Source: Diadema antillarum (taxonomy: Eukaryota). From it: 64,000 nt of DNA. The notes under the pieces were generated by a model that worked only from the letters and a program-made list of their open reading frames with translations, had not been told where the DNA came from and made no database searches. The translations under genes were made by a program, and so were the position numbers. Of this stretch, positions 33,601-55,680 are shown piece after piece (within the stretch, counting starts at the first letter, position 1; the number at the start of each line of letters is the position of its first letter). Where the stretch lies: NCBI RefSeq assembly GCF_040938485.1, contig NW_027270987.1:1302001-1366000 (forward strand). The letters are read 5' to 3'.

Positions 33601-36600
33601 ATAATGGTCAGGCTACAAAAACCTCTAAACATCTTGCCTACGAGAACGCAACTTATCTCATTACCCACAAATATCGGACTTCTCTAGTCGGGGTTTTAAC
33701 CATATACAGTTATTCACAACATGGCTTTTGAATGTGTCAGCCTGGAAAATGAATACGGAGAAATATCGTTTAAAGTGAATGAGCAGTAATTTTGACTTGT
33801 CGTGGAGGGTCTAGGTATACCTTTCCTGTATTCGTGGACCCGGTGAAGGAGATTTTGGCCACCTGCGGACTCTCGCATATCACCTTGCCCACTTCGGCGG
33901 CGTGAGCGCGGGAGCATGGCACCACATTGAACACACCCGCTGGAAGACCCGCTTCGTTTGCAAGCTATGGGGAGAAAAGAGACGCTACAATCTTGATCAC
34001 AATGTCTGGCTTTAATACTACGTTATTTCTCTTAAAACATCTTCGAAAGAAGTGTAAATTAGCTGCAGTGACGCACAGTGTAATTACTATTGAATAAATA
34101 TGAAATCATAGATTTTCAGATTTCTTTCACTTTCCTATACAGATTTCGCAATACATGTACTTTCCTCACATTACAATGATGAAATATTCTGAGGATTCTG
34201 CACTGTATGTACAGATGATATCAAATACAAAGCGTAACTTCTACAAACAAAACTACAGCTACTCCAAAATAGGTAAAACTGACAAGTAAAGCTTTTTTTA
34301 AGTAATTGATTGTAATGTCTGTCTTTTTTCTGCTCACGCGCGAAGTGGAATTATGAACTATATTCATACAGCCAGTCTACGCAAGCACGTTCCTCCAGTT
34401 TCCATACCTCACACAGGGCCAGAGCCGACAGGGGAGTGTCTTCGGCCGGTTTCACCACCACCGTGCAGCCAGCGGCGATGGCGGCTGCTGCTTTCCTCGT
34501 GATCATGGCACTAGGGAAGTTCCACTATACACAAATGGAGATAAGACAGAGGTAAGCGTTAGTAAGAAAATAAATGAAATATGAACAAGTCCATTATTAT
34601 GACACAAACTGTCACAGCACGATGCTCTGAATATAGGAAAAACCCTTTCAGCGCTACGATTTACAAAAACGCCGTTGACAATGTATTGTATGACTACGTT
34701 TTTACGAAGGTAACGACAGAATTAACAATCACTTTTACTAAAAGATATCCATTTCCTAGATCGCCTGAAGAAAACTTCTTCCCATTTTGCTCTTACAAAA
34801 CAACAAACATAATTACAACAAACATAATGAGCAGCAGCTACATTTTCCTGATTTTATTGAGATATGTTATGTTGTCAAGTAGCTATTGTTCTGTGTACAT
34901 TTTGATAATATTAACGTCGAAATAATAATAAACAATATTGCGGGGGATTTTTATGTGTGTATACATAATCTGGTCCCAAGTCTTAATTCTGGTTATTGAC
35001 TGACAATACATTGGAACATGATTATCAATGTTCTGTTGGCATTGATAAACCATCAGCGCCAGTCTGAAAGATAAAATGTGTGCTGCTGCTACTACTAACT
35101 GCTACTGACTACTACTACCACAACCACTGCTATTTAGAGTATAGCAACAAAACAGGTGCATTGAACAGCTCGTTACTAGATTTCCAGGGGAATACAAGCA
35201 GCAATATATTTGAAAACATTTTAGTAAACCGGCCAATTGGGACGTGTAACGTACGGGTGTTATCATGCCGGCTACGCCTACTGGCTGCTTCATGAAGATC
35301 ATCCGTTTGGTCTTGAACGGCGACGGGACAACGTCCCCGTAGGCCCGCTTGGCCTCCTCAGCAAACCACTCAAAGAACGACGCTGCGTATCCGATCTCGC
35401 CCTTAGCTTCCGCCAGTGGCTTGCCCTGTCGTGTCGATCGGTAACCGTCAATCCGCGCGACATGGGGAAAGTTTGGGGTGTGAATAAAGAGAGTTTACAT
35501 GATAAGACTGAATATGTCTTCTTTAAAGTTGTTTCCTTGCACGATGAGATGGTATATTATCATACATAGTCGGTACGTGGATTATCGCAAACTTCTACTA
35601 ATCATCGGTCAGAACAGTTAAGTTGTCAGACATTGCGGAATGGGAGTCAGATATGGCGATTATTAAGAATTAGAATAAAACGACGCACAAGTATAGACCT
35701 AGTTGTAAAAAAAAAGCAAGGTGAAGACGAAAATAACATTGCGCTGTAAGTCGGTGATACGTGCGTTAACGGGAATCATATTATCATTATAGTGCGCAAT
35801 AGCGATTATTATCGGTTTATCAATACAAATTAATCATGATTCGTTACTATAGACATATTACTGCGATATATTTAACATGATCACTTCATCTTACGTTTGA
35901 TCCACGGTGGAACATATGTTATCCGTCATATCAGCAGAATTACCCTTATTTAATGACTGGGAAACTGTCAACATTCGGAATCATGTTGTCAATGATTACA
36001 CCTAGTGTTTGAATTTTACAGATACAACGTCGATAATCACGTCAGATAGAGAATAAAGGATTTACCTCCTCTCAAAAAAAGGAAAAAAAATCGAGTGAAA
36101 ATATTCACTCTTGAAGGAGTGAATACAAAAAAGAGTGAATTTAGAGTGAAATTGGAGTGAATTTTGAGTGAAAATGTTCATCTTCACTCGTTTTAGAGTG
36201 ACCTCAGGGATCACTCCAAAATCTTCGAGTGATCCCTGAGGTCACTCCAAATTGAGTGAAATGAATGATATAAATGATATACGTATATTCTTATAAGAAC
36301 ATGTTTACGGCATATAAATTATGGTTGCCGTCATTACGTACGTTTTCAGCCGTCAGGATCTTTGCCAGCTTCTCCTGATTCTGCATCATTAGCTCAGCCC
36401 ATCTTCGTAGGATGATACTCCTCTCCTGCCGATTGGAACAAATATCGATTCTTTGTTATCGTAACCCATTAGGTCCTTGGGTCCTTACTGCAGAAATAAT
36501 CACTTTGCCCTCTTTAAATTGGAAACTCTACTTTTGTTGTTGTTTTTTCCCTGCGTATACTAAAAAAAGGATTAGTTGAAACCGTTAAATTCATCGGATC

Positions 36601-44782: not shown

Positions 44783-47543
44783 CATGAATGCATTTTAGTA
44801 AATCATACAATGTACATGACCTCGATTCTGTACTATTAGATTAAATCCATGACAATGCACAATAATCCCAGGGGTAGATTTATTTTACCAAAGTCAAAGG
44901 CAGAGGTGAAATTCAAAAAAAAAAGTACGGGGTCATCTACCATTGCACTTGGAATGCACATAATATTGAATAGTGCCTTAAAGGGATGGTACAGTATTGG
45001 TGGAGATGGGAATTGGGTTTTAACTTTTTGCGAGATACCAAGAGAACACTTATGAAATAGTACAGAGCATACCATTTTAAGAGGAATTCAAAGTTTATTT
45101 GATGAAAATCGGGTTTGGCATAACTGAAACATCCAAAAACAAAGGAAAACAAAGCGATCGTAAAAAAGTGTGGGTCCCACACTTATTAGAATCGCTCTGT
45201 TTTGGATATCTCAGCCATTTCAAAACCAATTTTCATCAAATAAACGTCGAATTCCTCATGGAATTACATGTTCTTTCATATTTCATAAGAGGTTTCTCAT
45301 TATCTCACCAAAAAATGTAAGAAACCTGAAATTAGGTCTCTCCCAAAACTATACAGTCCCTTTAAAACCTACTGAACACGCACAATGAATTTGTTTAAGT
45401 ATACAGGTGGTGTCTTTCACATTAAATTATAACTAGGGCCAGATCTCGTGGGTATAATAAGTGCATGAGCGTACGCTATATCGTAAAATCAACAACAAAT
45501 GCAAATTCAACCAATATATTATATGGTATCAGAACAATAATAAAATTCATCCCACGAAGTCATTTTTCCGGTCCCTTGACAAAAAAACAATTAAAGTACC
45601 AGATCTTCGCTCTGCAGAGCAAAGACCCGGCACGAGCGAACCTTGAAGGTCAAATCATTTTGTATGACTTCTCAAAATCTTCTTCCTGTACTTTGAACCT
45701 TACAGCTGTACCTACAGTCGAAATAACGCACTGTCACCATACCGTGTGCCCGGTAAGAGTATGAGTCGGTATGTGTAGAGATTATCGGGGACATTTCATC
45801 TAGTTCTTTGTGCACTGCAGGAATTCCTACGTGGAGGCTATCGAGCGTCTTATCCAATTGTTTGATATAGCGTCGTTTGTCTGATGGTCGTTACGTAATG
45901 TAATGTACCCATAACGACGTTTAGTTGCTCTCACAATGTGTTTTGTTCTCTCTCTCTATTTTAAAACGATTCGTCCACATTCAGAATAGGTGGAATCTTG
46001 CTCCGCCTGGCAAATCATTAGTACAACGAAATTACGCCACAGTTACCTGTCTCCATCGCATTTCTATGGGTAGCTCAATAGACCACTTCACCAGGGAGGT
46101 GGAAGAGAGATCGACTCTTTCCCACCTCCTCGACTTTACTGACAAGTCACATTACATGTATACCTTAATAACGTAGACATTTCCCCTAGACAACAATCAA
46201 ACTTCCCCAAGGCTTGCCTGACATACCAACAACTACAATGCATACGAAATGGATTCTACGTATTGAAATGATTTTAGTATGCACAGGTGGAAGACCAAGC
46301 TTGCCCAGGTCCTTAAAAGAAAAACATTCATAAAAGTATTATTTGAATACGCTAATAAACTGACATAATAAAAATGAAATATATTTCTCGAGTTGGAGTG
46401 CACAAAGAAATGTAGTTTCTGTTGAAATAATCAGTCGCCTCACTCCTGTGTAGGCCGTCACAAATGTTTTGTGAATCGTGTAGTAAAAGAAGTCCTGAAA
46501 TCGTCGGGAGCAGCAATGATTATTAACCTTACAATGATGCATTACGAGGTCGTATTCTTTGGGTTGATATTCGAAGAAATGCACGGAAACGTGTATACTT
46601 GGGTGCAAAATGGAAAGGATAAGGGAAAAGTGGAATCAGGTCGACAGCACAGATTTAGTGTTCAGGTGATGTATTATTTAGAATCCCTTGAAGACTCAAA
46701 ATATGCAATCATAATTACTTTCCCAAGTGAAGAATCTAGAAAATCATCACAAGAAGGCGAAATAAATCGCTACTATTACTAAAAGCGCATTTGGACCTAT
46801 AGCGGGGAACACAAAAAAAAAAACCCACAAAAGCAAAGCAAAGCAAACCAAAACAACTTTGAATCAGAAATTCGTATTGACATCGAAGCAAGGGTATTTA
46901 ATGACAACTAGGTCAACTGATGGAACGGACGCTAGCTTGTATGAGCCTGATGGACACCCGGTTGAATTTTGTTGGCCCATGCAACCCGATATACCACCTA
47001 CATGTATCTCTGACAGTTTCATTCGTTCAAGACCACGTCTAGTCTGAAGCGAGTGAGCTCTACAAGGATTCTCTCTTAAGGGTTTACATGATATACCTTG
47101 GCAGTTGTGTCCCTCCAGGGTCCGTAAAAAGTCTCGTAGGCAACCCTGACCGCTTCTTCCATGTCGGCGGCATTGCCATCAGCAACCAGGGCCAGTTGGT
47201 TCCCATTGGCCGGATTCTTCACGGGGTACGTCGCTCCGGACTTGGCCGCCACCCACGAACCGTTGATGAAAGCCTGCTCGCGAAACAGCGGGCCGAAGCT
47301 CGACAAGGACGACGACATTCTGAGGTGCTGGTGGAAAAAGAGGTGCGGCTTTGGGACATCCGTCCGTGAGAGTCTGGCGGTGAGAGGTCCTCGACAGACG
47401 GTGGCGTGCGGCTGGGATGACACTGACTGATGCCGGAGCGAAGTGTGACACCTCGTGCGGTTGCTGAACCGTGCAGAGAGCACCCTCGGAAAATTTGCCG
47501 AAGGCCTGAGCAGGTATGTCACTGACTGAGCCATCATTGCCAT
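22805..47543 (-). CDS. ALDH5A1: Succinate-semialdehyde dehydrogenase, mitochondrial-type, paralog A (9 exons, 565 aa)
   Basis: Exons 47543-47097, 36425-36342, 35425-35255, 34524-34408, 33964-33821, 33341-33198, 32646-32491, 30845-30676, 23069-22805, all GT-AG and in frame. [22 protein letters not shown] and NEGLISS keep the SSADH residues R213, R334, S498, E306, C340 and C342 (human numbering). The N-terminal ~75 aa are Arg/Ser-rich and acid-poor. The ORF-track start at 47573 is TTG; the first ATG is 47543. Confidence 0.96.
25560..26045 (-). mobile_element. 3' fragment of an RLE-type non-LTR retrotransposon (HERO/NeSL/R2-like), degenerate
   Basis: After correcting two +1 frameshifts: TLHHILSNCP...[10 protein letters not shown]...RPDLLILW...IVELTVP...HQRKVEKY...LEIWARG, i.e. 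zinc-knuckle end, RHN motif and PD-(D/E)xK endonuclease. Confidence 0.8.
27338..27689 (-). pseudogene. Disabled extra SSADH terminal exon inside intron 8 of paralog A
   Basis: Phase-2 acceptor (ccacttccccgctcag); reads F*DEEE[87-bp insert][84 protein letters not shown]. Confidence 0.9.
27583..27669. repeat. Interstitial telomeric repeat (TAACCC)n with TAATCC variants
   Basis: 87 bp, about 14 units, sitting inside a codon of the pseudo-exon. Confidence 0.95.
30881..31229 (-). mobile_element. tRNA-derived SINE with Nin-like central domain
   Basis: A box TGGCTCAGTCGG, B box GGTTCGAACCC, core ggacataaaatgaaggtcccgtgtg...atgcacgtaaaaga, (AAAC)n tail. Confidence 0.8.
32166..32302. other. Assembly gap in intron 7 of paralog A
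   Basis: Run of N. Confidence 0.99.
36068..36265. mobile_element. GAGTGA/TCACTC-repeat MITE fragment (same family as 50267-50469)
   Basis: Shares gagtgaaaat(a/g)ttcactcttgaag with the 50267 copy; internal perfect hairpin gagtgacctcagggatcactc...gagtgatccctgaggtcactc. Confidence 0.7.
39290..43906 (+). mobile_element. Tx1/L1-clade non-LTR retrotransposon, 5'-truncated (ORF2 plus 3' UTR)
   Basis: ORF2 39402-43161 has an APE domain (FLQET, GGDFN, SRLDY, PDH), RT ([32 protein letters not shown]) and C-terminal CSFC...HLFLHC. A-rich tail at ~43890-43906. No ORF1 in view. Confidence 0.93.
39402..43161 (+). pseudogene. Tx1/L1 ORF2 (endonuclease + reverse transcriptase) with two lesions
   Basis: Frameshifting deletion near 39438 where the NVRGL-type APE motif should be, and an in-frame TAG at 41923-41925 (FDFL*HGKDR, expected W). 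ORFs 39565-41925 and 41956-43161 share one frame. Confidence 0.9.
44139..44260. mobile_element. Small Harbinger-type MITE
   Basis: TIR GGGGTGTTTCATCAA/TTGATGAAACACCCC; possible CAG TSD. Confidence 0.75.
44982..45361. mobile_element. Non-autonomous Kolobok-type MITE
   Basis: TTAA on both sides; TIR AGGGATGGTACAGTATTGG vs AGGGACTGTATAGTTTTGG (15/19). Confidence 0.8.
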
Positions 47544-47880
47544 TTCATGTGTCCTGACTATCGTGTAGTACAACGTAGGTGGCGATAGTTAATTCCCGAG
47601 CTAATGTTTATTCACTCAGGCGAGCACGCTGCCAGCTTCATCAAACTCGTGACTTCCGTTATCTATTCTGTGCGAGGTCTATGCTTGTCCCATTGATGAG
47701 AGATCCCTGTACAAGGGGGAGAGAAATCGATTAACTAATATTCATGTTCAATGCATAGATTCATTCTTCATGATAAACATATGTAGTTCTTATACACGAG
47801 AATGTTCTCCGCAGCTTGCCCGACACAGCAAAATCTACAGCTGGCCAGAAATATTTCACATTATCATTGAAATGTATATA

Positions 47881-48484
47881 AGGCTGCGTTCACATATGTA
47901 TACGGTATTCGGTATTCGGTATGCGCTCTTCGCTATGCGCCGTCAAGTCGACCCAGTACACCATCACCCGCACCATCAACTCCCTACTTCTTCCTCCTAC
48001 ACAATCATCCCTGCAATAACAATTTCTAAACTGCACCGGAATGCCAGTCTACATGCCTATTTTTGCTAAAGGGCAAATCCAGACCAAAATTGTCATCATT
48101 TCATAAACGAAAGATGGTATACGCTGCTCGAAAATCGAACAAGCGCGATTCCCACTATCAGGGGCGGATCCAGGAATTCTGTAAGGGGGGGGGGGGGGGC
48201 GTGACTAATATTTCTAGTGCCACTTCCGGGTTTCATTTCATTGTTTTTCTTTTTATTTTTGTTGTTTTTTTACGAAAATTAAAGGGGGGCGTGCGCCGGT
48301 TGCGCCCCCCTCTGGATCCGCCACTGACTATGCTATATTATTCGCAGCTATTCGGTATTTTCGAATAGTGCCCTATTATGTGAACCGGTGTTAGGAAATC
48401 CTATTGTTCGATTCAAGCTGTTCGCGTGTCCTCGAAAACGAGCACCGAATACCCGAATAGTATACTTCTATGTGAACGCAGCCT
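47881..48484. mobile_element. Harbinger-like MITE just upstream of paralog A, containing a nested insertion
   Basis: Perfect TIR AGGCTGCGTTCACATA/TATGTGAACGCAGCCT flanked by TA; internal gtattcg/cgaata repeats. Confidence 0.85.
48159..48326. mobile_element. Unclassified MITE with 5-bp TSD
   Basis: actat-CAGGGGCGGATCCAG...CTGGATCCGCCACTG-actat. Confidence 0.85.
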
Positions 48485-48758
48485 TATGGTTACTTTGTGG
48501 CTTGCATGATATCAACACTTTTATGAGGGGTTTTCCCGTTCATTTTCAAACTATTTCATTCAATATAATTATTTGTAGTTTAATTTCATCCCGAGAAATC
48601 TGGAATATGCAAATCCTAATTTCAAATTCTTCTTTTGTCGATCATTTTCGAACAAAGTCAATCCAATTTAGTCATTAACTTTTGTCACACATTCACGTCA
48701 TTTACAATTTAAATCCGTACAATTGCAAACGTGACATCAAACGCAATTTCGTCTTTTA

Positions 48759-51005
48759 AGGGGGTATCTCACTGAGCGGCGAACGTTTGCGAACGTAGCG
48801 AATTTGGGAATTCGCCAGGGTTCGTAAACGGTTGCAAAAGGTTCGTTAACATTCGCAAGAAGTTCGCAAACGGTTTTTATTGTCGCAAACAGTTTTTCTT
48901 GTCGCAGATAAATTTTGAACATGTTCAAAATTTCTTTGCGAACCTTTGCGAATTTGTATTTTCGCTAACAATTGCAAACATTCGCAAACATTCGCAAAAC
49001 ACTCGTAAGAATTCGCAAACGGTCGTAATACGGTGTCGCTAACATATGATTCGCCACTGCTAGCGAACAAGTAACCACATGGTTCCTATATAAAAGCTTC
49101 TGACACAGACAAGGTTCCACTCTAAGAAAGTTCTTGAAGCTCTTGACATCTCCATCATAATTGTAATTGCTTGAAAAGCTTTTCATATTGACTAAAGTCT
49201 GTCCTCTGCAACAAGCACTCTCTGACTCTCTTTCTTTTCTTCTTCCTTTCTTGTTTTTCTTTATTTTATTTCTCTTATGCTGCACAATTATAGCTGTAGC
49301 AGCAGCCTGACAAAGCAGCTCTTCAAGGATAGCAACACCTTGAGCCTCTTCTTGGCAGAAATTTATTTACATATCCTGGAAATCCATTGTCACAAGAGAT
49401 CTGAATTCAGTGGAAGGTTTTATGTCGTTTTATGGGTCTTACTATACACAATCGCCTGGTACTTTTCTAGGTCCAACAACATTCGCAAAATTGTCGCAAA
49501 GGATTTGCAAACAGTTGCTAGTATTTGCAAAACTGTCGCTAACATTTGCAAAATTGTCGCTAACATTTGTAAAATTGTCGCTAACATTTGCTAACATTCG
49601 CTAATAGTCGCCACCTGTGTTCGCAAACACTTTCGCAAACATTCGCTAAAGTGTTGCTAATTGTCGCTAAACATCGCTAAAAGTCGCTAACTGTCGCTAA
49701 TGGCAGAAGCGAACTTTGATTTTTCGCAAACATTTAAAAAAGCTGGTATCTCACTGAGCGGCGAACGTTTGCGAACGTAGCGAATTTGAGATTCGCCAAC
49801 TTTTCTGACGAATGTTTGCGAAAAATCAAAGTTCGCTTCTGCCATTAGCGACAGTTAGCGACTTTTAGCGATGTTTAGCGACAATTAGCAACACTTTAGC
49901 GAATGTTTGCGAAAGTGTTTGCGAACACAGGTGGCGACTATTAGCGAATGTTAGCAAATGTTAGCGACAATTTTGCAAACGTTAGCGACAATTTTGCAAA
50001 TGTTAGCGACAGTTTTGCAAATATTAGCAACTGTTTGCAAATCCTTTGCGACAATTTTGCGAATGTTCTTGGACCTAGAAAAGAACCAGGCGATTGTGTA
50101 TAGTAAGACCCATAAAACGACATAAAACCTTCCACTGAATTCAGATCTCTTGTGACAACCGTTCAAGATGGATTTCCAGGATATGGAAATAAATTTCTGC
50201 CAAGAAGAGGCTCAAGGTGTTGCTATCCTTGAAGAGGTGCTTTGTCAGGCTGCTGCTACAGCTATTCTCTCTAGAAAAGAAGAGTGAAAATGTTCACTCT
50301 TGAAGAAGTGAATAACAGAAAAGAGTGAGTTTCAAGTGAAATTAGAGTGATTTTGGACTGAAAATGTTCATTTTCACTCAAAATTCACTCCAATTTCACT
50401 CAAAACTCACTCTTTTCTGTAATTCACTCCTTCAAGAGTGAACATTTTCACTCTTTCTTTTTCAGAGAGTTGTGCCGCATAAGAGAAATAAAATAAAGAA
50501 AAACAAGAAAGGAAGAAGAAAAGAAAGAGAGTCAGAGAGTGCTTGTTGCAGAGGACAGACTTAAGTCAATATGAAAAGCTTTTGAAGCAATTACAATCAT
50601 GATGGAGATGTCAAGAGCTTCAAGAACTTTCTTAGAGAGGAACCTTGTCTGTTTCAGAAGCTTTTATATAGGAACCATGTGGTTACTTGTTCGCTAGCAG
50701 TGGCGAATCCTATAAAAACGTTAGCGACACCGTATTACGACCGTTTGCGAATTCTTACGAGTGTTTTGCGAATGTTTGCGAATGTTTGCAACTGTTAGCG
50801 AAAATACAAATTCGCAAAGGTTCGCAAAGAAATTTTGAACATGTTCAAAATTTCTTTGCGACAAGAAAAACTGTTTGCGACAATAAAAACCGTTTGCGAA
50901 CTTTGTTGCGAATGTTAACGAACCTTTTGCAACCGTTTACGAACCCTGGCGAATTCCCAAATTCGCTACGTTCGCAAACGTTCGCCGCTCAGTGAGATAC
51001 CCCCT
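48759..51005. mobile_element. Palindromic PIF/Harbinger derivative (inverted duplication of a deleted element)
   Basis: Ends AGGGGGTATCTCACTGAGCGG at both sides, TTA TSD (48756-48758, 51006-51008); ~975-bp inverted arms; a third terminus copy (AGCTGGTATCTC) at 49741; both arms carry the N-terminal transposase remnant. Confidence 0.9.
50267..50469. mobile_element. Palindromic GAGTGA/TCACTC MITE inserted into the right arm of the Harbinger palindrome
   Basis: ~40-bp TIR ctctctagaaaagaagagtgaaaatgttcactcttgaag; absent from the left arm; possible 2-bp TT TSD. Confidence 0.85.
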
Positions 51006-51771
51006 TTAGCGATCATTTTCGTCAAATTTGCCTTCAAATTTATCTAATACCCTTTCTGTTATGATTTCAGTTATTTTTTTCCTGTAACCGTTCACTTTTC
51101 CACATTTTATACACACACGTGTACCCCACCCCAACACAAAACAGACAGACAGACACACGCACACATACAAATACACCATACTCAAGAGCACATCACACGG
51201 AGACAAATATAATTATTATGTACTGTCACACAAACGATTTCCAGGCACATAATTAAAGACAAAAAAAAATTATATTGTAGAGTCTTTTATTTTTTATTTC
51301 AAAACGGACTTTCTAATTTTTTTTAAGAAGATCGAATGAAATGAATAAATACAAGTGTACATACATTTACCTCCATCAAATCATTAAAAAGAGAAGAACA
51401 TATTGCGACAACAGGAAAACGTATAGACCGTAAGACCATGAGTGCTACAAACGAACGACGCGATAGGCACCATTATTGAATCACTAGTATACCGTGGAGC
51501 TCAGTCTGCATATCATTATCTACAGGGTTCCGCAGAGGGACGGGGTTTAACCATCCGAAGGAGTGCAGAATTCTGCTATCATATAAGGGCGCATATCGCA
51601 GATCTTGTGGTAGCCTTTTGACAAGGCCCTCTCGCTGTATGATGGCTACAACGAGAGGGTCTTGGCCAAAGGCTAATCTTGTGGTTGCCCGACAGCGTTT
51701 TTTTTTTTTTTTTTTTTTTAAGACGGCACAGATTGGGGCATGGCGCGTGTTAAACCTATGGGAAAAACGTT

Positions 51772-51912
51772 NNNNNNNNNNNNNNNNNNNNNNNNNNNNN
51801 NNNNNNNNNNNNNNNNNNNNNNNNNNNNNNNNNNNNNNNNNNNNNNNNNNNNNNNNNNNNNNNNNNNNNNNNNNNNNNNNNNNNNNNNNNNNNNNNNNNN
51901 NNNNNNNNNNNN
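51772..51912. other. Assembly gap
   Basis: Run of N. Confidence 0.99.
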
Positions 51913-53597: not shown

Positions 53598-55680
53598 AAG
53601 TTTGAAAGTTTGAAAGTTTGAAAGTTTATTTACTCACAACCCAAACTCTGGGTATCGGAGTCCAATGAAAAACATATAGCACATTATAATATCAATAAAT
53701 AATAATTACAAATAACTCTGAAAAGTGTACAAAACAACTATAACAAACAAAATAAGAATGAGATGCGACTGATGAAAAGAAAAAAAATGTACAGAAATAT
53801 ACAATATATACACGATATATGGTTTAAAAAAAACAAAGAAAGGGAAATATGACGAGAGAGAGAGAGAGAGGAGAGAGAAAGAAGGGATATATGGAGGTGA
53901 AGAGGGAGAGTGAGAAGGACACAAGACTGGTGAATTAACAAAAGATATACGAGTGACTTTTGGTTCAGGAAAAAAAACAAAAAAAAAACGCAAAGACATA
54001 CGGAAATGAATTCATACGTTAAGTGAACAAGAATGAAGGAAATATGGACGAGAAGAAGAAGAAGTAGAGAGGGGAAGAAAAAAGGAGGAGAGAATGAAAA
54101 GACAAATAAGTTACATATCAATTGTAAAGAAGGCACAGCCTGTAAAAAGGCATGTAGTATTTGCAAAAAGGATAAAAAATACTAATAATCTAAACATGTG
54201 TCATTATATAATTACAAAACTTGGATAAATTGGAAAGGACTGTTTTCTTTTGACAATTAAATAATTGATCCATCTTCATAGTGTTGGGGTATTTCCAGTA
54301 ATATTTTTTAAGTATTTCTTTCGTTGTTCATTAAAGAGTCTACACTGAAAAAGGTAGTGAAATTCATCACCAATTTTCTCTTCATGAATATGGGTACAAA
54401 ATCTTTCGTTTCTTGGAATCTGATTGTATCTTCCGAAACAATTGGCAGTTTATGATTAGCGCAACGGAATTTACATAAAATTTTTGCCTGTGAATCATTA
54501 AGGTGTCGAAAATACTTCTCAAAATGAAGATCCTGCTTAAAAATTCGATAATTTAAACATTGAGAATTTTTGTCTACATTACTATGCCACTCTTGTTTAT
54601 AAATATCATTTAATCTGGTACTAACTAAACTTTTGAAGCCAGCTAAAGTGAGATGTGCTGCTTGGCTGTTCCAAATTGCAGTTAGACCTAAGTTGTTAAA
54701 TATTTCTTTTATCCTAATTACCCATGTCATCGAATTTTCTTGTCTCGCCGATAAAACATATTGAAAATTATACAAAATATGCGCTATCTTTGACATATTA
54801 CTGTTAACAAGTTTAAACCAAAACATTAACATCCGAAGGGTCACTGTTTTTTGTAATCTATCTTTACCTATTTCTCCGTAAACCATATAATTCGGAGTTC
54901 GCTTATGTAATCCAAGAAGTTCCTTACAATATCTACAAAAGAAAGTTTCAATTTGGGCGAGGTCTTCAAAACCCCAAATTTCACTGCCGTAAAGCAAAAT
55001 AGGCATGATCAAACGTTCAAATAGCTCTAGTTTTACGTCGATTGGAAGGAGGAGAGGTAAAATTTTACTTTTCATGGAATACAACGCTCTTTTGGCTTGG
55101 GTTACTTGTTTGTTTATAGCTTTCTTAAAATTATTATTATTATTGAACGTCGTTCCTAAGTAAACATAATCATCGCAGACACAAATTTTGTCATCTCCGA
55201 AAAGAAAGGTAGGAGCTGTTCTAACTTTTCCACGGGAAAAAATAACTATCTTGGTCTTAGCAGTATTAACGGTCAGATGCCACAATTGGCAATAATCAAA
55301 TAAAGCATCAAGAGCTAACTGGAGTTCCTCAGCATTTTCAGCCAACACAATCGTATCATCTGCATATAGTAATGTGAATAAATCAACAAACATATTCACT
55401 TCTTCGGTAGAACACGTTTCATTGATACCTGACGAAAGAAAATCCAGGCCAGGGTATCTCTGAGACAGAAATGACGAAAAATCGTTTAAATACAACGAAA
55501 ATAATATTGGCGATAAATTCTCACCTTGTTTTACACCGATGTTACTCTTAAAAAACTCTGATTTAGAATAGGCCCTCATAAAGGTCACGGATTGCGAATA
55601 TGTGTCTATTATTGTTTGCATAAATCCACTGTGCTGTGTCAATACAAACCTAACCACTAATCGTTTGTAATACCAAGGAG
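53598..55680 (-). mobile_element. 5'-truncated non-LTR retrotransposon, RTE-X/CR1-group reverse transcriptase
   Basis: ORF 55657-54308 has GVKQGENLSP, LYADD, YVYLG, LLYGSEIWG, KFRCANHKLP. A frameshift near 54440 restores GRYNQIPRNERFC...DEFHYLFQC. AATAAA is followed by a (TCAAACTT)3 tail. Clade assignment is from motif memory. Confidence 0.85.

What the first reader, a model, noticed from the sequence alone, without database searches (positions are those of the whole stretch)
48759..51005. Mu-killer-like palindrome: inverted duplication of a Harbinger transposase 5' end
Seen: 49741-51005 is a deleted Harbinger (left end AGCTGGTATCTC, subterminal repeats, start of transposase, right end). On plus from ~50168 the remnant reads MDFQDMEINF...KKGRRK / VRECLLQRTDLSQYEKLLKQLQ / DVKSFKNFLR.EP.LFQKLLYR, resembling the Harbinger N-terminal WVRxWL..GQY..LL.EL...F.NFLR motif. 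48759-49733 is an inverted copy lacking the left end. The composite has two right ends and one TTA TSD, so it inserted as a unit. The arms differ by scattered SNPs, a 9-bp indel and a MITE in one arm only, which argues against an assembly fold-back. Established: maize Mu killer is an inverted duplication of the MuDR 5' end whose hairpin RNA silences the family. Inference: readthrough would form ~1 kb of dsRNA covering subterminal and transposase sequence, a possible animal Harbinger-killer endo-siRNA locus; it could also form a cruciform or nucleate silencing 1.2 kb from the SSADH start.
Basis: partly seen in the sequence, partly recalled or inferred. Interest (0 to 1): 0.85.

Follow-up and report, generated by a model that had tools for sequence, protein, structure and literature searches.

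The report
Head-to-head Harbinger transposon palindrome
Two copies of a small, very abundant cut-and-paste transposon lie head to head 1.2 kb upstream of an aldehyde-dehydrogenase gene, forming a real 2.2-kb DNA palindrome that would fold into double-stranded RNA if transcribed, but nothing available shows that it is transcribed or silences anything.

Summary
48759-49734 is the reverse complement of 49811-51005: 976 aligned nt, 19 substitutions, 98.05% identity. The 76-nt centre is a 6-nt filler plus the first 70 nt, including the left terminal repeat, of a complete 1,265-bp non-autonomous element. TTA flanks both outer ends.

The element is PIF/Harbinger-like by its 3-bp TTA target, its 53-nt terminal repeats and subterminal repeats. 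It also carries a frameshifted N-terminal transposase remnant that a related contig reads in frame.

- All four family ends seen with a flank show TTA, so matching outer TTAs do not prove insertion as a unit.
- The "MITE in one arm only" is not private. MITE-bearing copies occur at roughly 75-120 times single-copy depth, and the MITE-less arm may carry an excision footprint.
- The family has hundreds of dispersed copies, so a single hairpin locus is not needed to make dsRNA.

No RNA or small-RNA data could be laid on the locus, and no listed contig bridges the centre. The Mu-killer-like function is therefore untested. The arms show no CpG decay.

Verdict: a real composite or aberrant-transposition product of a known kind, and a candidate hairpin locus only. 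Another unchecked note of this scan reports a second transposon palindrome elsewhere in this genome.

The parts
48756..48758 (.). Outer left flanking TTA (target-site duplication candidate)
   Evidence: Read directly; matches 51006-51008.
48759..49734 (-). Left arm: inverted copy of the element from its position 71 to its right end. No MITE. Has a derived 10-bp deletion and a derived stop at codon 7.
48759..48811 (+). Outer-left terminal inverted repeat (a 'right end' in inverted orientation)
   Evidence: D6, I4.
49735..49740 (.). 6-nt filler TAAAAA between the broken inner end of the left arm and the intact left terminus of the complete copy. No TTA lies next to that terminus.
49741..51005 (+). 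Complete 1,265-bp non-autonomous PIF/Harbinger-like element: left TIR, subterminal repeats, coding remnant with nested MITE, subterminal repeats, right TIR.
   Evidence: I11: 53-nt TIRs, 94%.
49741..49810 (+). First 70 nt of the complete copy, including the left TIR. Absent from the left arm. Together with the filler it forms the 76-nt spacer of the palindrome.
49811..51005 (+). Right arm of the palindrome
49845..50067 (+). Left subterminal repeat array (10- and 21-nt periods, TTAGCGACA-type). Its mirror lies at 49478-49700.
   Evidence: (D1-D5).
50168..50265 (+). Start of the transposase remnant (MDFQDMEINFCQEEAQGVAILEEVLCQAAATAI), interrupted by the MITE.
   Evidence: (P0001-P0003, P0005 share it).
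50267..50469 (.). Nested foldback MITE (arms 50275-50366/50369-50460, 89%). An extremely abundant family.
   Evidence: I6; word depth 2.7e5 against about 12 in the flank.
50470..50690 (+). Rest of the frameshifted N-terminal transposase remnant (KKKRKRVRECLLQRTDLSQYEKLLKQLQ / DGDVKSFKNFLREEPCLFQKLLYR).
   Evidence: the in-frame relative P0003.
50735..50945 (+). Right subterminal repeat array (GTTTGCGAA-type). Its mirror lies at 48819-49020.
50953..51005 (-). Outer-right terminal inverted repeat
   Evidence: I11.
51006..51008 (.). Outer right flanking TTA

Best explanation
This is a genuine 2.25-kb imperfect palindrome built from two head-to-head copies of one high-copy, non-autonomous PIF/Harbinger-type transposon. 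One copy is complete (49741-51005) and carries a nested foldback MITE. The other is inverted, lacks its first 70 nt, and abuts the intact left terminus of the complete copy through a 6-nt filler.

At the centre, a terminus cut exactly at the first base, with no TTA beside it, is joined with filler and no microhomology to an internal breakpoint of a second copy. That is the signature of an aberrant-transposition or end-joining product. Possible routes are a composite insertion, an end-adjacent deletion between two neighbouring copies, or an inverted partial duplication. Ordinary insertion does not produce this junction.

Shown: the structure, the family's Harbinger-type hallmarks, its high copy number, and the shared ancestry of the MITE. 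Inferred: the way it formed. As far as any data go it is a passive transposon rearrangement. If RNA polymerase ran through it, either strand would fold into a stem of roughly 740-960 arm-to-arm pairs and could feed Dicer, but this is only a structural capacity.
For: Structure: (976 nt aligned, 98.05% identity, 76-nt spacer). The terminal motif occurs three times against 0 expected.

Harbinger-type features: TTA at both outer ends, at the end of a divergent relative (L004) and at another copy's left end (X20 record 22). 53-nt TIRs and subterminal repeat arrays. The N-terminal remnant is read in frame in P0003. Language-model look-alikes fall in clusters carrying DUF8418, DUF8040 and Plant_tran (a lead only).

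High copy number: word depth on the arms is 1e3-2e4, against about 7-15 for the single-copy right flank in X1, with similar ratios in X2 and X4.

MITE predates the locus: L002 carries it at the same site. A contig spanning the element-MITE junction (50113-50295) has depth 377.6 in X2 against about 5 for the flank. The matching indel variant has depth 1575 in X1 and 1771 in X4.

Outer junctions in two other samples of organism A: X2 record 9 (48460-48781) and X1 record 7 (50984-51120, no mismatch).

Not a fold-back artefact: the arms differ by 19 substitutions and four indels, and the centre is asymmetric.

Hairpin capacity: MFE -1881 kcal/mol against about -555 for shuffles, with 959 inter-arm pairs on the plus strand and 740 on the minus. 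The longest perfect duplex run is 164 bp.

No sign of long-term methylation: CpG observed/expected is 1.22-1.27 in the arms, and at most 1-2 of the 19 differences are CpG transitions.
Against: No listed contig bridges the centre (49734/49741), so the join itself rests on the assembly alone. An N run lies 766 bp to the right, at 51772-51912. The formation route is not resolved. At every site where the read data give information, one arm has the family-majority base and the other a rare one. That fits both a duplicated single copy and two young copies. No catalytic transposase domain is present, and Pfam gives no hit to the remnant, so the superfamily assignment rests on the ends, the target site and a motif-level lead. 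Passivity is an absence of evidence: no RNA or small-RNA library of the organism could be laid on the locus.
Confidence: 0.6

Rival explanations
1. Mu-killer-like silencer. Read-through transcription makes a hairpin RNA of about 1 kb, which is diced into endo-siRNAs that silence the autonomous Harbinger and its derivatives in trans.
For: The structure has the required capacity. It contains TIR, subterminal and 5' coding sequence, as Mu killer does (PMC3440606). Composite inverted duplications of Ac/Ds made by alternative transposition do trigger siRNA silencing in maize (bioRxiv 10.1101/2020.01.07.897926). Animal hairpin-RNA loci that make endo-siRNAs exist in Drosophila (PMC10317233, PMC5392987). 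The locus sits 1.2 kb upstream of an Aldedh first exon on the opposite strand, so upstream antisense transcription is conceivable.
Against: There is no evidence of transcription. The only RNA-labelled run holding family words (X20, 8 Mb, labelled metagenomic) shows other copies, with foreign flanks and without the MITE, and may contain DNA. No autonomous partner was found among 1.84 billion representative proteins or in the word-indexed search. The family has hundreds of dispersed copies, which already provide sense and antisense sources, so one hairpin is not needed. CpG observed/expected of 1.2 shows no methylation footprint.
Confidence: 0.07
2. The composite was mobilised and inserted here as one unit, using its two outer 'right' ends. 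Other copies of the same composite should then exist elsewhere in the genome.
For: Both outer ends are flush with TTA. The inner left end has no TTA beside it and the left arm lacks its own left end, so neither part can be a simple independent insertion in its present form. The terminal 53 nt are nearly the same at left and right ends (D6 and I11).
Against: TTA flanks every family end seen, so matching TTAs carry little weight. The subterminal arrays of the left and right ends differ, and it is unknown whether two right ends are competent for transposition. A centre-junction pattern found nothing in the JGI metagenome contigs, although that collection held no family member at all.
Confidence: 0.35
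3. Inverted partial duplication of a single MITE-bearing copy, the Mu killer mode of origin. The arms then diverged by 2%, and the MITE was excised from the left arm.
For: At the MITE site the left arm reads AATT where MITE-less relatives read C or CA. It keeps the TT that borders the MITE in the right arm and in L002. The site is 3 nt longer and palindromic, which looks like an excision footprint. Both arms share the same state at polymorphic family sites 50935 and 50954.
Against: All four indels and 15 of the 19 substitutions set the left arm apart from L002. This asymmetry is uninformative if L002 is an allele of this locus. That is suggested by the near single-copy depth (18.8) of the right-arm base at 50084 in X1.
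Confidence: 0.4
4. Assembly artefact: a mis-join of two family copies, or a chimeric fold-back read.
For: No listed contig bridges the centre. An N run lies 766 bp away. Another transposon palindrome with a 1-nt loop is noted elsewhere in this assembly (unchecked scan note s1-229767).
Against: Fold-back chimeras give identical arms and a symmetric centre. Here there are 19 substitutions, four indels including a 203-bp MITE, and a 76-nt asymmetric centre. Repeat-driven mis-joins link copies in direct orientation, not inverted. Both outer junctions are seen in two further samples.
Confidence: 0.07

Closest known systems
Maize Mu killer (Muk)
   Same: An inverted repeat of transposon sequence that includes a terminal inverted repeat and the 5' part of the transposase gene. 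It lies next to a host gene and can form a long hairpin RNA (PMC3440606).
   Different: [quoted passage not shown] None of this is shown here. Muk is a partial copy of the autonomous element. Here each arm is nearly a whole, already degenerate non-autonomous element, of which only about 320 bp is coding remnant. The superfamily differs (Mutator against PIF/Harbinger), and the host is an animal without plant RNA-directed DNA methylation.
Ac/Ds composite insertions made by alternative transposition
   Same: Aberrant use of transposon ends produces composite insertions with inverted duplications of transposon fragments, joined at internal breakpoints (bioRxiv 10.1101/2020.01.07.897926). The centre here, an intact terminus joined with filler to an internal breakpoint, fits this kind of product.
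   Different: That is hAT in a plant, and the dsRNA, two siRNA classes and silencing were measured there. Here the formation route is inferred from one junction only.
Animal hairpin-RNA (hpRNA) endo-siRNA loci, for example in Drosophila
   Same: A long inverted repeat that would be a Dicer substrate when transcribed (PMC5392987, PMC10317233).
   Different: Those loci are defined by their small RNAs and their targets. Here no small-RNA data exist, and the pathway's use in this (apparently echinoderm) host is not examined.
Head-to-head double elements (double Ds, double P elements) and foldback-type derivatives
   Same: Two copies of one cut-and-paste family in inverted orientation, one of them incomplete (from my own knowledge, not checked in a paper here).
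   Different: Double Ds is one element inserted inside the other with both ends of each retained. Here one copy has lost its inner end, and there is no target duplication at the inner junction.

Membership tests
PIF/Harbinger superfamily (non-autonomous member) | 3-bp target-site duplication, typically TTA/TAA | tested here: met
   TTA at 48756-48758 and 51006-51008. TTA also follows the end of the divergent relative L004 and precedes another copy's left end (X20 record 22).
PIF/Harbinger superfamily (non-autonomous member) | Terminal inverted repeats with subterminal repeat arrays | tested here: met
   53-nt TIRs at 94% (I11). Arrays with 10- and 21-nt periods at both ends.
PIF/Harbinger superfamily (non-autonomous member) | DDE_Tnp_4/PIF-type transposase (or a recognisable remnant of it) | tested here: inconclusive
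   Only an N-terminal remnant is present. Pfam gives no hit. P0003 reads the motif in frame. Language-model neighbours carry DUF8418, DUF8040 and Plant_tran, which is a lead and not an alignment. No full-length relative was found.
PIF/Harbinger superfamily (non-autonomous member) | Second Myb/SANT-like gene in autonomous copies | not testable with these tools
   No autonomous copy of this family could be fetched. The scan's notes on complete Harbingers elsewhere in the genome are unchecked.
Mu-killer-like hairpin silencer | Inverted duplication covering the TIR and the transposase 5' region | tested here: met
   About 320 bp of each arm is coding remnant.
Mu-killer-like hairpin silencer | Transcription through the centre giving a hairpin RNA | not testable with these tools
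   No RNA library of the organism was served. X20 shows only other copies and may hold DNA.
Mu-killer-like hairpin silencer | Small RNAs from both arms | not tested
   No small-RNA run was offered.
Mu-killer-like hairpin silencer | An active autonomous element with matching sequence, silenced in trans | tested here: inconclusive
   None was found in the protein collections. The genome itself could not be searched.
Composite insertion by alternative or aberrant transposition | Transposon terminus joined to an internal breakpoint of a second copy in inverted orientation, without a target duplication at that junction | tested here: met
   At the centre, left-arm position 71 is followed by TAAAAA and then base 1 of the complete copy. 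AAA, not TTA, lies beside that terminus.
Composite insertion by alternative or aberrant transposition | Other copies or a donor site that document the event | not testable with these tools
   A centre-junction pattern had 0 hits in the metagenome contigs, a collection that held no family member.

The most novel reading that the evidence does not exclude
An animal counterpart of Mu killer. A palindromic Harbinger composite beside a constitutively active promoter is transcribed into a hairpin of about 1 kb, whose endo-siRNAs (or hairpin-primed piRNAs) hold the whole Harbinger family in check. It would arise by the transposon's own aberrant transposition.
Probability: 0.06. Interest if true: 0.7.

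Novelty: new member of a known kind. Interest (0 to 1): 0.3.

Why it matters
If it were shown to make small RNAs that repress its family, it would be a rare animal example of a DNA transposon initiating its own silencing through an aberrant transposition product. That mechanism is so far documented in maize (Mu killer, Ac/Ds composite insertions). As it stands, it is a well-resolved example of a palindromic composite of a very abundant Harbinger-type MITE-like family. It is useful mainly as a marked locus, with diagnostic variants on each arm and a unique centre junction, on which small-RNA, methylation and long-read data can be tested directly. A long palindrome 1.2 kb upstream of a housekeeping gene is also a potential fragile or regulatory site, but no data bear on that.

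Tried and rejected
- Reads: one read-laying run on 48400-51400 with X1, X2, X4 and X20. Logan contigs break at the repeats, and none of the listed pieces bridges the centre. Contig depths are flat means, so per-site copy estimates disagreed between runs (for example 49597 and 49648). I dropped an argument for shared-derived variants built on them.
- RNA runs: only a tiny 'metagenomic RNA-Seq' run and a seawater metatranscriptome were labelled RNA. This is not evidence of transcription.
- Autonomous partner: phmmer of the 133-aa left-arm frame against 1.84 billion representatives gave only short N-terminal fragments from small contigs. A word-indexed search with P0003 gave one more. The 90% clusters hold 1-2 members. 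Exact look-up of nine window ORFs, including the one spanning the centre, found none in the collection.
- Pfam on the remnants and relatives: nothing meaningful.
- Pattern scans: the centre junction had 0 hits in metagenome contigs. The 17-nt TIR had 39 hits, none of which aligned to the element by BLASTN, so I take them as chance matches. The TIR had 0 hits in viral contigs.
- I first read L002's closeness to the right arm (15 of 19 sites plus all indels) as proof that the arms came from two sub-lineages. I withdrew this because the right-arm base at 50084 has near single-copy depth in X1, so L002 may be an allele of this very locus.
- Findings look-ups by sequence were blank.
Full report
**Observation.** The repeat finder gives five collinear inverted-repeat blocks that pair 48758-49734 with 49811-51006 at 97-99%. 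A pairwise alignment gives 976 aligned positions, 19 substitutions (8 transitions, 11 transversions), 98.05% identity and K2P 0.0197. There are four length differences, and in every case the left arm lacks the sequence:
- 10 bp at 50158-50167
- about 203 bp at 50267-50469
- 6 bp at 50714-50719
- 1 bp near 50905

The 23-nt terminal motif occurs three times in the window, against 0.00 expected: 48763 (+), 49745 (+) and 50979 (-). The unit 49741-51005 therefore has both ends (53-nt TIRs at 94%, I11). The left arm is the same unit inverted, from its position 71 to its right end. The 76-nt spacer is TAAAAA plus the first 70 nt of the complete copy. TTA lies immediately outside both outer ends.

**What the element is.** Three lines of evidence point to a non-autonomous PIF/Harbinger-type element.

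First, the target and the ends. TTA flanks both outer ends. It also follows the end (GAGATACCCAC) of a divergent relative in contig L004. It precedes the left end of another copy in run X20, whose loose flank ends in TT directly before the A at 49740.

Second, long TIRs and dense subterminal arrays of 10-nt and 21-nt units lie at both ends.

Third, there is a short degenerate coding remnant. In the right arm, one frame gives KKKRKRVRECLLQRTDLSQYEKLLKQLQS followed by a stop. The next frame gives DGDVKSFKNFLREEPCLFQKLLYR. A phmmer search of the left-arm frame against 1.84 billion representatives found four short relatives from small metagenomic or Logan contigs, plus one low-complexity, apparently spurious hit (P0004). 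One of the four, P0003, reads the same region in a single frame: KKKRKTVWVREWLLQRTDFCQYEKLLQQLHDEDVKSFK. The remnant is therefore a real, once-coding N-terminus.

Pfam gives nothing on these pieces. Language-model neighbours of P0003, whole or residues 48-106, fall mostly in clusters carrying DUF8418 and DUF8040, some together with Plant_tran. From memory, these are N-terminal domains that accompany PIF-type transposases. This is a lead, not a test. No catalytic domain, second gene or autonomous partner was found.

**Copy number.** Logan contigs of three DNA runs were laid on 48400-51400: two samples of organism A and one of organism B. Word depth on the arms is 1e3-2e4, against roughly 7-15 on the single-copy right flank in X1, with similar ratios in X2 and X4. 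The family therefore has on the order of hundreds of copies and is shared by at least two labelled organisms. The run labels (an 'echinoderm metagenome' and marine metagenomes) suggest an echinoderm host. No other copy lies in this window.

**The MITE.** The insert at 50267-50469 is a foldback element (92-nt arms at 89%, I6). Its depth is 2.7e5 in X1, so it is among the most abundant repeats of the genome. A half copy lies at 36084-36189.

It is not private to this arm. ENA contig L002 carries it at the same site, with 88 more central bases. A contig spanning the element-MITE junction (50113-50295, 2 mismatches) has depth 377.6 in X2, where the flank is about 5. The associated one-base variant at 50279 has depth 1575 in X1 and 1771 in X4. 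MITE-bearing copies are therefore a multi-copy sub-family, and the insertion predates this locus.

Out-group copies L001, L003 and L004 show three things:
- The MITE-less state is ancestral.
- The 10 bp before the ATG are ancestral, since they keep TTCAAG or GAGAAG before the ATG. The left arm therefore has a derived deletion.
- The left arm's TAA at codon 7 is derived.

At the MITE site the left arm reads GCTAT-AATT-GTGC. MITE-less relatives read GCTAT-C(A/G)-TGC. The right arm and L002 read GCTAT-T[MITE]TT-GTGC. The left arm is 3 nt longer than a true empty site, keeps the bordering TT and is palindromic. This looks like an excision footprint, though it is not proven.

**How it formed.** The centre is the informative part. 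The complete copy's left terminus is intact to its first base but has AAA beside it rather than TTA. Six filler bases follow. Then comes an internal breakpoint (position 71) of the inverted copy, with no microhomology. A normal insertion cannot give this. It is what end-joining of a transposase-cut terminus to a broken second copy would give.

Candidate routes:
- Alternative transposition giving a composite insertion, as documented for Ac/Ds (bioRxiv 10.1101/2020.01.07.897926).
- An end-adjacent deletion between two neighbouring head-to-head copies.
- An inverted partial duplication of one copy, the Mu killer mode (PMC3440606).

This is weak, because TTA flanks every family end seen, so any two right ends would be bordered by TTA.

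I could not decide between one source copy and two. L002 agrees with the right arm at 15 of 19 diagnostic sites and at all indels. However, the right-arm base at 50084 has only about single-copy depth in X1 (18.8 of 1758.6). L002 may therefore simply be an allele of this locus, which removes the argument. At every site with read information, one arm has the family-majority base and the other a rare one. Both models predict this.

**Is it real?** Fold-back chimeras give identical arms and a symmetric centre, and repeat-driven mis-joins are direct, not inverted. Here the arms differ in structured ways and the centre is asymmetric. The outer junctions are seen in two other samples: X2 record 9 (48460-48781) and X1 record 7 (50984-51120).

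Against this, no listed contig bridges 49734/49741. An N run lies at 51772-51912, which I left untouched. An unchecked scan note reports another transposon palindrome with a 1-nt loop elsewhere in this assembly. I put an artefact at about 7%.

**Function.** If transcribed, either strand folds into a long arm-to-arm stem. The MFE is -1881 kcal/mol on the plus strand and -1898 on the minus, against about -555 for shuffles. There are 959 inter-arm pairs on the plus strand and 740 on the minus, with perfect duplex runs up to 164 bp. The MITE forms a side hairpin. That is a capacity, not a finding.

The locus lies about 1.2 kb upstream of the first exon of an Aldedh-family gene on the minus strand (ORF 47076-47573, PF00171 at E 9e-6). 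That gene is transcribed away from the palindrome.

No RNA library of the organism was served. The one RNA-labelled run with family words (X20, 8 Mb) contains other copies, with foreign flanks and without the MITE, and may hold DNA. The arms show no CpG decay: observed/expected is 1.22-1.27, and at most 1-2 of the 19 differences are CpG transitions. With hundreds of dispersed copies, sense and antisense family transcripts are likely available without this locus.

My estimates: about 20-25% that hairpin-derived small RNAs are detectable, and about 6% that the locus acts as a family silencer.

**Comparison and verdict.** It works like, or could work like, Mu killer, the Ac/Ds composite insertions and animal hpRNA loci (PMC3440606; bioRxiv 10.1101/2020.01.07.897926; PMC5392987; PMC10317233). 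Only the structural criterion of those systems is met here. Transcription, small RNAs, a target and trans-silencing are untested.

It is best filed as a new member of a known kind: a palindromic composite of a non-autonomous Harbinger-type element produced by aberrant transposition or repair. Its value is as a well-marked test locus. Interest 0.3.

Noticed in passing
window 50267-50469; also 36084-36189; L002:470-765: Foldback MITE with word depth about 2.7e5 in X1, against about 12 for single-copy flank. It is among the most abundant repeats of this genome. The window copy lacks 88 central bases that L002's copy has. It contains no CpG at all.
   Followed up: partly
window 49286-49292 (left arm): At the MITE site the left arm reads AATT, where MITE-less relatives read C or CA and MITE-bearing copies have T[MITE]TT. 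It is 3 nt longer and palindromic, so it may be an excision footprint.
   Followed up: partly
window 49367-49369 and 49388 (left arm): The left arm carries a derived stop (TAA at codon 7 of the remnant) and a derived 10-bp deletion just before the ATG. Out-group copies keep the right-arm state.
   Followed up: yes
window 54308-55657 (-): A 449-aa open frame with an RVT_1 reverse-transcriptase domain (E 2.7e-16): a non-LTR retrotransposon fragment 3.3 kb to the right of the palindrome.
   Followed up: partly
window 51772-51912: N run (gap or masked) 766 bp to the right of the palindrome. Left as it is. It slightly raises the chance of local assembly trouble.
   Followed up: no
runs X19, X25, X26 (organism A): Small contig sets (17-41 Mb, kind unknown) hold 15-26% of the palindrome's sampled words. 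They may be transcriptomes containing family transcripts.
   Followed up: no
window 48400-48500: The left flank bin has word depth 5e4 in X1, so another very abundant repeat lies about 300 bp to the left of the palindrome.
   Followed up: no
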